Assembly: GCF_011386835.1 (NCBI RefSeq)
Contig: NC_088802.1
Coordinates: 44,020,001 to 44,084,000 of the forward strand
Direction of reading: 5' to 3'
Origin: Chrysemys picta bellii
Taxonomy: Eukaryota
Length of the DNA: 64,000 nucleotides
The position numbers and the translations under genes are program-made. This document shows positions 30,653 through 33,399 of the stretch, piece after piece. The first letter of the stretch is position 1, and the number at the start of each line of letters is the position of its first letter. The notes under the pieces are model-generated. The model did no database searches and was not told the DNA's origin. It worked only from the letters and a program-made list of their open reading frames with translations.

Positions 30653-30809
30653 TTCAGCACCAGGGACAGCTCCCGCAGCCCGCGGGGCGAGCACCCCGGA
30701 CAGCTCCCGCAGCCCGCGGGGCGAGCACCCCGGACAGCTCCCGCAGCCCGCGGGGCGAGCACCCCGGACAGCTCCCGCAGCCCGCGGGGCGAGCACCAGG
30801 GACAGCTCC
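30653..30809 (+). promoter_or_regulatory. Five tandem REST/NRSF RE1 (NRSE) sites
   Basis: 30653-30673 ttcagcaccagggacagctcc vs consensus TTCAGCACCACGGACAGCGCC. Core AGCACC-NN-GGACAG is intact in all five repeat units. Confidence 0.75.
30657..30809 (+). repeat. 34-bp minisatellite, 4.5 copies
   Basis: Unit gcaccccggacagctcccgcagcccgcggggcga starting at 30657, 30691, 30725, 30759, 30793 (last partial). Confidence 0.95.
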
Positions 30810-33399
30810 AGGCGCAGTTCCCTCTACGCACAGCACCGAGCCCCAGAGACAGCTCCCAGCCCCAGCGGCCGGCCAAGGCGCCGAAGCCCTGCAGTTGGAA
30901 GAGGAAAGCAGCGGCTGCAATTACCCAAACTTGAAAGCGCTCGTGTTTCACCTCCATCCCCCTCCCCGGCTCCTCCCCCCGCTGTCTCTCCCAGCAGCTC
31001 CCGAGCTCAGTTGCGTGTTGCGAAGCAAGTAAGGGCTGCAGCAGCGAGGGGAAGCCTCAGGAAACGGCACTGGACCCTAGGGGCTTCCTCGGTCTTTCCT
31101 GCAAGGTCCGGTCCCTCTGCAACAGCAGTTATTTCCATCCCACTTGGAACAGAAAAACCCCCATCACCAGCCAATAGGCGCTGTCAGCCCCTGACTTGGG
31201 CAAAGTGCATCTGCCTCCCCGCAGAATGAGCGGAGCGGGGCATTTGGGGCGGGGGAAACGGGCCATTTCCCAATGACGGAGCGACTGCAGCCCAGGGTTA
31301 TTCAGCGAAAAGGTGGGGGCGCAGGCCAGTTTCTTTCCGTGCACCTCATACACGCGGCGCGGCGGAGAAGAAGAGTTTGAACCTCAAATATCAAATCTTC
31401 AATCTCGGTAAAGGGAAGGGCCGCGTGAAGAGCTGGAGAGACTTGGAAAGACTCAGCTGTCCTGTCACCATTGCGCCATGAGCCAAGAAACTCTCCGATC
31501 CCAATTAAACTGCCAGATGGATCGATCCCCTCTGACATAATTCCTGTCCCATAAGCAACCAAAAGAGCCTACGGCCAGGCAGGCTGCTATCAGCCCGGCC
31601 CTTTCCAGGAGAGCGCGCTGCTAAAGGGATGAGTTTCGGGCTGAAAGTTCCCGTTCCATGGTCGGGGTTTCAAGCCCTTCTCTTCCTGCAGGGAGGAGAG
31701 CGCTGCCGGGAGCCGCAAGAGCTCCGTGCTCTTAACCCAGAATTAGTCCCCTGGAGTGATTGAATATGGAGAGGCCTTTTGACTAGAGAAATAAGGCCTC
31801 TTATTGTTATGAAGGCTGAATATTCTGACAGCCAGGCTCTAGGAGAGGGTGTTGGCATAATAACTGAAATTGTTCAGAACACTTGCAAAACAGGACTAAG
31901 GTTTTACATTGAGACTGGTGCGTCACAGAGCGACAGGGGGAGTGGTTAGCCCAGTCTCTGCACAGCCCAGGCTCTTTGGAGTACCCCTATTACTGGCCAA
32001 GCCCTCAGCTTAGGTTTTCACAAGGGCCAGTCCTGCAGCTCGGCTTCTCCAAGACTGAACCTTCAGGCTCCAGCACCCCCTGGGTCTCATCACAGGCTGT
32101 CCACCGAGTCCAGAGGAGTTCAGACTCCTGCTAGAGTTTTACCCCTTCAGGGAGCAATGCAGCCACTAAGTATCTGCAGAGACACAGGGCAGCCTTTTCT
32201 AGGCAAGCCAGCAGTTGGCAGTCGACTGCAGTACAGCCCTTGAGAACCCTTAAGTTGGCATGGAAAAGTCAAACCTAGGACTGAGTCTAATATTGGCAGA
32301 AGCAACTGCCCCTATTTGTCTATGGTTTTCTGGAGTCCATCCTAGTCTCTCTGATTCTGTGAGTCTGGAGCCCAGTCCTTAACCCAGCCACCGGACGCCT
32401 CCTGTGTCTTCGTCCCCCCTGCAGCCCTGCTGTGTTCCACATCTTCTTGGCCACCCGCTGTTGAGTCAATGTTGAATCATCAGGTCTTCCATTATCTCAC
32501 CAGAGTGCTTCATTCATATGTGTCCATGCCATTCAGTTCATGATGGTGCATTTGGGTCAAGCCACACTGGCAAGTGACATCCACCCATCTCTTACTACCC
32601 TGTCCCAGGGGAGGAAATTAACTCCTTCACAGCCAATGGTTAACAATACAAAGTGTGGGTAAACTGGGTCATGCATATTGTTGATAAAAAGTAAAAGATT
32701 TTCCACATTCTCCACAACTGGGACAGAGCGTCACCTGTGTAAACCAAAGCAGTGCCATGAACATCATTGCTAGATTGGCATAATGCCTTTCTAAGAGGGC
32801 TCAGATTAATGGACCTATGCACATCTGGCCCAGTGGTCTTTACAGAATAAGAACATATCCACTTCCACATTAAAAAAGTCTATTTTGCTTCTCTGCTGGT
32901 CCCCTTTAGGAAAAGAGCTGTCCTATTTTTAAAGAGATCTTTTTATCCTTACCATATGCTTCAGAATTCTTGGGCAGGATCCCAGCTAGTCCCTGAAGTT
33001 TAGCCAGTCTTCAGACTAATTCTTTGATCATTGGTGGTATTCTCTCAACATCTCTGGTGATTTTGTCTCTCTCCAGAATCTCGGTGTATCTTGCTGATGC
33101 TGCAAGATGTCTTCATTCTTTATTTTTACTCTGGAAAATGTGTCTGTTCCTTGACTTCCTTAGGGTTCCCCCCTTCTCGCACACCCCTTATTCTTTTGAA
33201 GAGAATTTTCTATTCCTTCATGTCATTTTAAATATATTCTCTGAAGCTTTTCTTCCTTCACTTGCTTAATATGCTATTTCTCCACCCACCTATTTTCTCA
33301 GTAAAGAAAGAGGTTCACAGATGAGCAAACAATGTGATTGGAGGACCTTCAATAAAGAAGACGAGAACTGTTTAGAGAGAAGACAAGAAAGGAGATGAT

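What the first reader, a model, noticed from the sequence alone, without database searches (positions are those of the whole stretch)
30653..30867. A minisatellite made of REST/NRSF silencer elements at the RAB37-like promoter
Seen: a near-consensus RE1 (ttcagcaccagggacagctcc) has been amplified as part of a 34-bp unit, so five AGCACC-NN-GGACAG cores lie in tandem ~290-450 bp upstream of the first in-frame ATG (30363). A possible wide-spaced half-site pair follows (cagcacc-9 nt-agacagctcc, ~30831-30856). One 12-bp core is expected ~0.008 times per 64 kb at equal base frequencies; the copies are not independent. Established: REST represses neuronal/neuroendocrine genes, including exocytosis machinery, via RE1; RAB37 acts in regulated secretion. 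Inference: a copy-number-variable silencer 'rheostat' that could tune RAB37 repression, and through the nested layout affect CD300LF-like expression, between individuals or species.
Basis: partly seen in the sequence, partly recalled or inferred. Interest (0 to 1): 0.75.

Follow-up and report, generated by a model that had tools for sequence, protein, structure and literature searches.

The report
Tandem REST sites at RAB37 promoter
A binding site for the neuronal-gene repressor REST, kept just upstream of one RAB37 start exon in gar, bird, bat and turtles, has been copied head to tail in this turtle from two to five units; such tandem REST sites are already known, and the extra copies look weaker than the original.

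Summary
A 34-bp unit is repeated 4.5 times at 30656-30809. It puts five AGCACC-NN-GGACAG cores 290-442 bp upstream of the ATG (30363, minus strand) of a true RAB37 first exon, inside the window's only CpG island.

Unit 1 (30653-30673) matches the published 17-bp RE1/NRSE consensus perfectly. A match with at most one mismatch sits at the same place and orientation in leatherback turtle, ptarmigan, a bat and gar. Each such match has a chance probability of about 0.004-0.025. A 2009 paper lists human RAB37 among genes with a canonical RE1 and bound REST in the promoter. So unit 1 is almost certainly an ancient REST site.

The amplification is young. The leatherback has two units, one close relative about three, and another about five. 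Units 2-4 are identical. Units 2-5 carry CG where the consensus has TY, and the base at position 3 is C in all five unit-1 orthologues. They are probably weak sites.

The "wide-spaced half-site pair" is a change private to this lineage. The "rheostat" idea and any effect on CD300-like genes remain untested.

Tandem head-to-tail RE1 groups of up to five, and a REST-bound VNTR at MIR137, are already described. This scan also noted a 23-unit RE1 array in L1CAM of the same genome. Verdict: a new member of a known kind, of moderate-low interest.

The parts
30653..30673 (+). Unit 1: a full 21-bp RE1/NRSE (TTCAGCACCAGGGACAGCTCC). It reads on the strand opposite to RAB37 and starts 290 bp upstream of the ATG. 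This is the ancient, conserved site.
   Evidence: It has 0 mismatches to NTYAGMRCCNNRGMSAG. Orthologous matches with at most 1 mismatch occur in L001, L002, L003 and L005 at the same place and strand. The chance probability per locus is 0.004-0.025.
30656..30809 (+). A 34-bp minisatellite of 4.5 copies carrying five head-to-tail RE1 cores.
   Evidence: TRF gives score 280 and 96% matches. The pattern has 5 hits against 0.01 expected. The 102 bp of extra units are absent from Dermochelys (alignment A1).
30687..30809 (+). Units 2-5: young copies (units 2-4 identical) with GCG in place of TTC at RE1 positions 1-3. They are probably weak or sub-threshold REST sites.
   Evidence: Each has 2 mismatches to the consensus, both at positions 2-3. 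Position 3 is C in all five unit-1 orthologues. The published PSSM is strongly constrained at positions 1, 3 and 7 (PMC1557810).
30836..30856 (+). U3: an older, degenerate copy of the unit (CCGAGCCCCAGAGACAGCTCC, 3 mismatches).
   Evidence: Dermochelys has CCGAGCACCAGAGACAGCTCC here, with 2 mismatches. Organism F shows 30842 C>A, and organisms C and F show 30835 A>T. The window's half-site arrangement is therefore specific to its lineage.
30262..30363 (-). Coding part of RAB37 exon 1a (MQPGWGAQSGAGSAAGMDANGARSPSYDEDLLHK), followed by a GT donor at 30261-30260.
   Evidence: Translation is. It is 91% identical to the N-terminus of Chrysemys Rab-37, P0001. The ...Y[DN]E.LLHK|[11 protein letters not shown] junction is conserved from fish to mammals.
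30317..30621 (-). 5' leader seen in contigs of two runs guessed to be RNA. It reaches to within 32 bp of unit 1.
   Evidence: 151-nt contigs of X17 (30317-30467 and 30471-30621) and X20 (30333-30483) lie here, with none inside or beyond the repeat. The RNA status of these runs is a guess, depth is about 3, and contigs cannot define a transcript start.
30200..31300 (.). CpG-island promoter region, the only one in the window.
   Evidence: GC is 0.60-0.75, and CpG observed/expected is 0.69 against 0.12-0.46 elsewhere.

Best explanation
An ancient RE1/NRSE lies in the CpG-island promoter or 5' leader of the RAB37 transcript that starts with exon 1a. Exon 1a splices to the [18 protein letters not shown] version of exon 2. 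REST most likely binds unit 1 and recruits its co-repressors, which dampen this promoter in cells with high REST. The second RAB37 start module (exon 1b with the [12 protein letters not shown] exon) would be left free.

The site already sat in a small head-to-tail cluster of RE1-like cores in the common ancestor of sea turtles and this turtle. In this turtle's lineage, replication slippage or unequal exchange then added three identical 34-bp units, taking the array from 2 to 5. The added units keep RE1 positions 4-21 and the canonical 2-bp spacer, but they have CG instead of TC at positions 2-3. They are probably low-affinity sites that add little, or add only at high REST levels.

What is shown: the repeat, the gene identity, the cross-species conservation of unit 1, and the recent copy-number growth. 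What is inferred: REST occupancy in the turtle, repression, isoform specificity, and weak binding by units 2-5.
For: Repeat anatomy comes, and the CpG island. RAB37 identity comes and from Pfam Ras.

Conservation of unit 1: Dermochelys has 0 mismatches, with a second unit 34 bp away. Lagopus has 1 mismatch, with a second core 30 bp away. The bat and gar each have 1 mismatch, and in each this is the only hit with at most 1 mismatch in 55-58 kb. Simulated chance per locus is 0.004-0.025. In the close relative F, the two substitutions inside unit 1 fall on position 1 and on the spacer.

Human RAB37 is listed with a canonical RE1 and REST in its promoter (PMC2687797). Tandem head-to-tail RE1 groups of up to five, attributed to tandem duplication, are known (PMC1557810).

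The expansion is young. Units 2-4 are identical. The collapsed repeat contig has a depth ratio of about 2.9 in organism C and about 1.15 in organism F. Dermochelys has 2 units.

The two 5' modules of RAB37 are shown.
Against: No binding or expression data exist for this species. No REST weight matrix was available here, so units 2-5 were judged only by a consensus and by comparison between species.

The site is degenerate or gone in platypus, beaver and a frog, so it can be lost. The bat copy has A at the normally invariant G13.

Human RAB37 was reported as highly expressed in T cells despite bound REST, so occupancy need not mean silencing. I could not confirm that the human site is the orthologue, because human sequence was not fetched, by rule.

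The copy-number estimates for organisms C and F rest on the k-mer depth of collapsed contigs.
Confidence: 0.7

Rival explanations
1. One reading: all five units are effective REST sites, and array length acts as a heritable dial that sets how strongly RAB37 (and perhaps the nested CD300-like genes) is repressed.
For: All five cores keep positions 4-17 and the canonical spacer. Tandem RE1s at SNAP25 and L1CAM are reported to recruit REST better than single sites, and below-cutoff sites can bind at high REST levels (PMC1557810). Copy number differs between related species. A REST-bound VNTR whose length changes reporter output exists at MIR137 (PMC4393679).
Against: Units 2-5 have G at position 3, where all five unit-1 orthologues have C, and the published PSSM is strongly constrained there. 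MPRA work shows a motif-strength threshold below which RE1s do not silence (PMC9903721). Units 2-4 are identical, so they are too young for selection to be visible. No within-species polymorphism was shown. Nothing links the site to the CD300-like genes beyond proximity.
Confidence: 0.2
2. The repeat matters for something other than REST. It could be a GC-rich structured 5' leader (each unit holds the palindrome CCCGCGGG), or a set of binding sites for another GC-box or CpG-binding factor. The RE1 likeness of the copies would then be a passenger.
For: Contigs from runs guessed to be RNA reach 30621, 32 bp from the array, so some transcripts may start in or beyond it. The unit is 79% G+C and lies in a CpG island.
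Against: Across species, what is conserved is the RE1 itself, not the rest of the unit. Bird, bat and gar share little beyond the 17-21 bp motif. No contig from the RNA-guessed runs lies inside the repeat. No structure or other-factor test was run.
Confidence: 0.07
3. Chance: a GC-rich minisatellite that merely resembles RE1, with no REST role at all.
For: GC-rich promoters throw up partial RE1 matches. Two-mismatch hits are near the chance level in the window, 26 against 17 expected.
Against: A zero-mismatch hit is expected 0.03 times per 64 kb. Matches with at most 1 mismatch recur at the orthologous spot in four independent lineages, for a joint chance of about 1e-8. There is also a human REST-occupancy report.
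Confidence: 0.03

Closest known systems
Tandem RE1 clusters of REST target genes (SNAP25, L1CAM and others; Johnson et al. 2006, PMC1557810)
   Same: Several RE1 motifs lie within 100 bp, all head to tail, in groups of up to five, and their origin is attributed to local tandem duplication. The arrangement was proposed to recruit REST at low concentration or to recruit several complexes at once.
   Different: Here only one of the five copies meets the consensus. The other four are identical, very young minisatellite units with a changed 5' edge. The published clusters were defined by a PSSM score of at least 0.91, which I could not compute.
RE1 with bound REST in the human RAB37 promoter (Zheng et al. 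2009, PMC2687797)
   Same: It is the same gene and the same factor, with a promoter-proximal canonical RE1.
   Different: The human case is one line in a genome-wide study. Its position, copy number and relation to exon 1a are not given, and I did not fetch human sequence, so orthology of the site is inferred, not shown.
MIR137 internal-promoter VNTR bound by REST (Warburton et al. 2015, PMC4393679)
   Same: A variable tandem repeat lies in a CpG-rich promoter occupied by REST, and repeat length changes reporter output and the response to REST isoforms.
   Different: The MIR137 unit is 15 bp and is not itself a full RE1. There the polymorphism and the reporter effects were measured; here they were not.
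The 23-unit RE1 array in the L1CAM intron of this same genome (scan note s1-314111)
   Same: It is in the same genome and is a head-to-tail array of units carrying the REST motif.
   Different: It involves a different gene, a 49-bp unit, an intronic position and far more copies. I did not examine that locus.

Membership tests
RE1/NRSE (REST binding site) | Match to the published 17-bp consensus NTYAGMRCCNNRGMSAG (quoted in PMC4430910) | tested here: met
   Unit 1 (30653-30669) has 0 mismatches. It is one of only two such hits in 64 kb, against 0.03 expected.
RE1/NRSE (REST binding site), units 2-5 | The same consensus match for each added unit | tested here: not met
   Each has 2 mismatches, CG for TY at positions 2-3. 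Positions 4-17 are intact. These units are therefore filed as RE1-like, not as RE1.
RE1/NRSE (REST binding site) | Two half-sites in the same orientation with the canonical 2-bp spacer (PMC9903721) | tested here: met
   All five cores read AGCACC-NN-GGACAG.
RE1/NRSE (REST binding site) | Score above the cut-off of a REST weight matrix (JASPAR MA0138, or the Johnson PSSM at 0.91) | not testable with these tools
RE1/NRSE (REST binding site) | Conservation at the orthologous position, as expected of a functional site | tested here: met
   Matches with at most 1 mismatch occur at the same strand and distance in Dermochelys, Lagopus, Hipposideros and Lepisosteus, at P 0.004-0.025 each. The site is absent or degenerate in platypus, beaver and frog.
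RE1/NRSE (REST binding site) | REST occupancy and REST-dependent repression | not testable with these tools
   The only evidence is the literature statement for human RAB37. It is not tested in the turtle.
Tandem RE1 cluster (Johnson 2006) | Two or more RE1s within 100 bp, all head to tail | tested here: inconclusive
   Five cores at 34-bp spacing, all on the + strand. Only one meets the consensus, and PSSM scores are unknown.
Minisatellite / VNTR | Tandem unit of 10-100 bp with length differences between genomes | tested here: met
   There are 4.5 copies of a 34-bp unit. Dermochelys has 2 units in its assembly. Depth ratios of the collapsed repeat contig imply about 5 units in organism C and about 3 in organism F.
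Minisatellite / VNTR | Length polymorphism among individuals of one species | not tested
Short-read contigs collapse the array in any case.

The most novel reading that the evidence does not exclude
The RAB37 exon-1a promoter carries an evolving head-to-tail array of REST sites under selection for total REST-binding capacity. A cluster of two or three cores is ancestral, being present in bird and turtles. Cores are lost and replaced: in this lineage the third core lost its canonical left half (30842), and a new left half appeared 7 bp upstream (30835), giving the 9-bp spacing that is one of the two non-canonical spacings (8 and 9 bp) shown to silence. In addition, three units were added. Through this array REST would gate specifically the RAB37 isoform with the alternative P-loop/switch-I exon.
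Probability: 0.15. Interest if true: 0.5.

Novelty: new member of a known kind. Interest (0 to 1): 0.35.

Why it matters
If the reading holds, it adds a clean natural example of how a long, specific repressor site multiplies by tandem duplication, with the ancestral (2-unit) and derived (3- and 5-unit) states available in living relatives. It also shows that the RAB37 RE1 is one of the few REST sites kept at the same place from ray-finned fish to amniotes. The Xenopus study found only 12 consensus sites shared in homologous frog and human regions (PMC4430910). Finally, it suggests that REST controls one of two RAB37 start modules rather than the gene as a whole. That could explain why human RAB37 is expressed in T cells despite bound REST. 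None of this changes current understanding of REST. It is a useful case, not a surprise.

Tried and rejected
1. Rab G-box motifs in the window: I searched all six frames and found none. The rest of RAB37 therefore lies off the window, and gene identity had to come from exon 1 alone, using a region-restricted word search.

2. My first guess was that the exon matched the mammalian '...SPSYDLTGK' start. It was wrong. The exon is the '...LLHK|[11 protein letters not shown]' start, exon 1a.

3. Coding reading of the repeat: rejected. The period of 34 is not a multiple of 3. All six frames are open only because of the high GC content. The array lies upstream of the conserved ATG.

4. Second RE1 at 42.1 kb as a duplicate of the promoter: rejected. 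Only the 22-bp motif is shared.

5. Rfam scan of the window: nothing found.

6. Five of twelve encoding-contig look-ups returned nothing (P0001, Emydura, alligator, Anolis, catshark). No squamate, crocodilian or shark locus could therefore be compared.

7. Supplement of Johnson 2006 (list of tandem RE1s): not held.

8. The 'RAB37 + NRSF' literature search gave no further direct evidence.

9. No REST weight matrix could be obtained, so I did not score with numbers from memory.

Only exon 1 was searched, by reference, and database proteins were used for the full length.

11. No human sequence was fetched or compared.

Full report
**The observation**

Tandem Repeats Finder reports one array at 30656-30809, with period 34, 4.5 copies, 96% matches and no indels. 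Read in register from 30653, the units are as follows:
- Unit 1 begins TTCAGCACCAGGGACAGCTCC.
- Units 2-4 are identical and begin GCGAGCACCCCGGACAGCTCC.
- Unit 5 begins GCGAGCACCAGGGACAGCTCC and then leaves the repeat.

The core AGCACCNNGGACAG occurs five times in the window, all here, against 0.01 expected. The array sits in the only CpG island of the window, at about 30.2-31.3 kb. GC there reaches 0.75, and CpG observed/expected is 0.69 against 0.12-0.46 elsewhere.

**The gene**

On the minus strand, the ATG at 30363 opens MQPGWGAQSGAGSAAGMDANGARSPSYDEDLLHK. A GT donor follows at 30261-30260. No Rab G-box motif exists anywhere in the window, so the remaining exons lie beyond the left end.

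A word search restricted to this exon, given by reference inside its open frame, found one protein. It is a 226-aa Chrysemys picta GTPase, 91% identical over the exon. That protein has the Pfam Ras family, and its closest solved structure is Rab-26. Its relatives are named Rab-37 from lamprey to mammals.

The N-termini show that RAB37 has two start modules:
- '...Y(D/N)E.LLHK | [23 protein letters not shown]...', the window's exon, called 1a here.
- '...SYDLACK | [23 protein letters not shown]...', called 1b here.

Exon 1a is conserved from gar to mammals.

Four Ig V-set exons lie on the opposite strand, two of them inside RAB37 intron 1. In bat and beaver a V-set gene is likewise nested on the opposite strand of RAB37. 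The nested layout is therefore real.

**Is unit 1 a REST site?**

The 17-bp consensus NTYAGMRCCNNRGMSAG is a published one, derived from 32 validated targets (PMC4430910). It has only two perfect hits in the 64-kb window, against 0.03 expected: unit 1 and an unrelated site at 42.1 kb.

I fetched RAB37 loci of seven other vertebrates through their annotated proteins. In the 500 bp upstream of the exon-1a ATG, always on the strand opposite to the gene, I found the following.

| Species | Site upstream of exon 1a | Mismatches | Distance to ATG |
|---|---|---|---|
| Dermochelys | TTCAGCACCCGGGACAGCTCC | 0 | 283 bp |
| Lagopus | TGCAGCACCGCGGACAGCGGC | 1 | 66 bp |
| Bat (Hipposideros) | TTCAGCACCAGGAACAGCGAT | 1 | 211 bp |
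| Gar | TTCAGCACTGTGGAGAGCTCC | 1 | 283 bp |

In bat and gar this is the only hit with at most one mismatch in 55-58 kb. First-order Markov simulations of each upstream segment give 0.004-0.025 for such a hit. Taken across four lineages, the joint chance is about 1e-8.

Platypus keeps only right halves. Beaver has lost this site, and a frog has none within 500 bp. The element can therefore be lost.

In the close relative F, the two substitutions inside unit 1 fall on position 1 and on the spacer.

Zheng et al. [quoted passage not shown] I did not fetch human DNA, so I cannot show that this is the same site.

Taken together, unit 1 is an ancient RE1 with high probability.

**History of the array**

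The alignment with Dermochelys is 84% identical over the promoter. It shows one clean 102-bp gap, so the leatherback has units 1 and 2 only. Its second unit is GCTAGCACCGGGGACAGCGGC, with 1 mismatch. The ptarmigan also has a second core 30 bp from the first.

A third, older copy of the unit follows the array. It reads CCGAGCACCAGAGACAGCTCC in Dermochelys, and also in organism F given its 30842 C>A.

Short-read contigs collapse the identical units into one 62-63-nt contig. Its depth relative to the flanks is 73.9/26, about 2.9, in organism C. The window's own sequence predicts 3.1. In organism F the ratio is 38.5/33.5, about 1.15, which means about two fewer units.

The order is therefore 2 units (leatherback), about 3 (F), then 5 (C and the window). 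This is a young, lineage-specific slippage expansion of a pre-existing small head-to-tail cluster. The estimates for C and F rest on depth, not on spanning reads.

**Are the added units REST sites?**

They keep positions 4-21 and the canonical 2-bp spacer. Positions 1-3 read GCG instead of TTC, which gives two consensus mismatches. Position 3 is C in all five unit-1 orthologues: window, Dermochelys, Lagopus, bat and gar. It is a pyrimidine in the second units of Dermochelys and Lagopus, and in those comparisons only the window's new units have G there.

Three points from the literature bear on this:
- Johnson et al. 2006 note strong constraint at positions 1, 3 and 7 of their PSSM. They also show that below-cutoff sites compete only at 100:1 and are occupied only when REST is overexpressed (PMC1557810).
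- Mouri et al. 2022 show a motif-strength threshold for silencing (PMC9903721).
- I had no weight matrix, so this remains a judgement: the added units are probably weak sites.

**The 'wide-spaced half-site pair'**

The letters are there, and the 9-bp spacer is one of the two non-canonical spacings (8 and 9 bp) that silence in MPRA. However, the A at 30835 that makes the left half is T in organisms C and F and in Dermochelys. The pair is therefore a private, recent state.

It arose next to a canonical-spaced core that this lineage lost at 30842. That could be compensatory turnover or coincidence, and I count it only in the novel case.

**Transcripts**

Two runs guessed to be RNA give 151-nt contigs over 30317-30621 and none in the repeat. 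If they are RNA, the 5' leader reaches to within 32 bp of unit 1. The RE1 array would then lie at or just upstream of the start region. The RNA status is a guess, depth is about 3, and contigs cannot place a start.

**Mechanism**

The best reading is as follows. REST binds unit 1, and perhaps the neighbours weakly. It recruits its known co-repressor complexes to the CpG-island promoter of the exon-1a transcript. The exon-1b start is a separate unit, so REST would control isoform choice rather than the whole gene. This is inference. It would reconcile REST occupancy with high RAB37 expression in T cells.

The rheostat idea (repression proportional to unit number) is possible but unsupported. 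An effect on the nested CD300-like genes has no evidence beyond proximity.

**Comparison with what is known**

- Tandem RE1s are described, with 27 pairs within 100 bp and groups of up to five, all head to tail. Their origin was attributed to tandem duplication, and they were proposed to recruit REST at low concentration (PMC1557810).
- A REST-occupied VNTR promoter with length-dependent reporter output is described at MIR137 (PMC4393679).
- This scan has already noted a 23-unit RE1 array in L1CAM of the same genome (s1-314111). I did not check that locus.
- REST at the RAB37 promoter is reported for human.

The finding is thus a new member of a known kind.

**Limits**

- There is no PWM, no binding data and no test of within-species polymorphism.
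- Five of the twelve locus look-ups failed, so no squamate, crocodilian or shark locus was compared.
- The organisms of the sequencing runs are coded, so I cannot name the relatives.
- There are no N runs in the window.

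Noticed in passing
window 42101-42121 (+): There is a second, independent perfect RE1 consensus match (TTCAGAACCACGGACAGCTCC), 11.7 kb upstream of the RAB37 exon-1a ATG and outside any CpG island. A degenerate RE1-like core lies 56 bp further on, at 42158. It shares only the 22-bp motif with the promoter site, so it is not a segmental copy. 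Its conservation could not be checked, because the fetched loci have at most 4 kb of upstream flank.
   Followed up: partly
proteins P0016, P0022, P0049 (and other 248-253 aa 'X1' models); P0001 vs P0043: RAB37 has two homologous versions of the exon that encodes the P-loop to switch I region: [37 protein letters not shown] and [37 protein letters not shown]. Each has its own first exon. Many automatic 'isoform X1' models splice both in series, giving a doubled P-loop that is probably an annotation artefact.
   Followed up: partly
L003 about 2861-2879 and L006 about 2863-2881 (minus strand; about 120-140 bp upstream of the ATG): Bat and beaver share a compressed RE1-like element, TTCAGCACTGGACAGCTCC. 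It has both half-sites but is 2 bp shorter than canonical. It is conserved between the two mammals even though the canonical-length site upstream is lost in beaver. Whether REST binds this spacing is unknown; MPRA data argue against most odd spacings.
   Followed up: no
L007 11863-11922 and 60032-60091: In the frog RAB37 locus, four near-consensus RE1 motifs (TTTCAGCACCCTGGACAGTGACTA and variants) occur as two inverted pairs 44 bp apart with identical flanks. This looks like a repeated or transposable element that carries an RE1-like motif.
   Followed up: no
window 45729-51386 vs 52946-58513: This is a tandem segmental duplication of about 5.6 kb at 94-95% identity, spaced about 7.2 kb apart. 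Each copy carries a CD300-like Ig V-set exon, at 50109-50549 and 57249-57689.
   Followed up: partly
window 30203-30233: A poly-C / C-rich tract in RAB37 intron 1, about 30 bp beyond the donor, attracts many short unrelated contigs in every run laid. It produces a false depth spike of 136-551 against 26-35 in the DNA runs.
   Followed up: no
L002 about 2745-2815: The ptarmigan RAB37 promoter has a (GGCTC)n pentanucleotide microsatellite of about 14 units, some 190-260 bp upstream of the ATG and next to its pair of RE1-like cores. This is another sign that the promoter is prone to slippage.
   Followed up: no
window 30528-30541: A GC-box-like GGCGGGGCGGGAC lies between the RE1 array and the ATG and is conserved in Dermochelys (alignment A1). 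It is plausibly the Sp1-type core of this TATA-less promoter. This is inference only.
   Followed up: no
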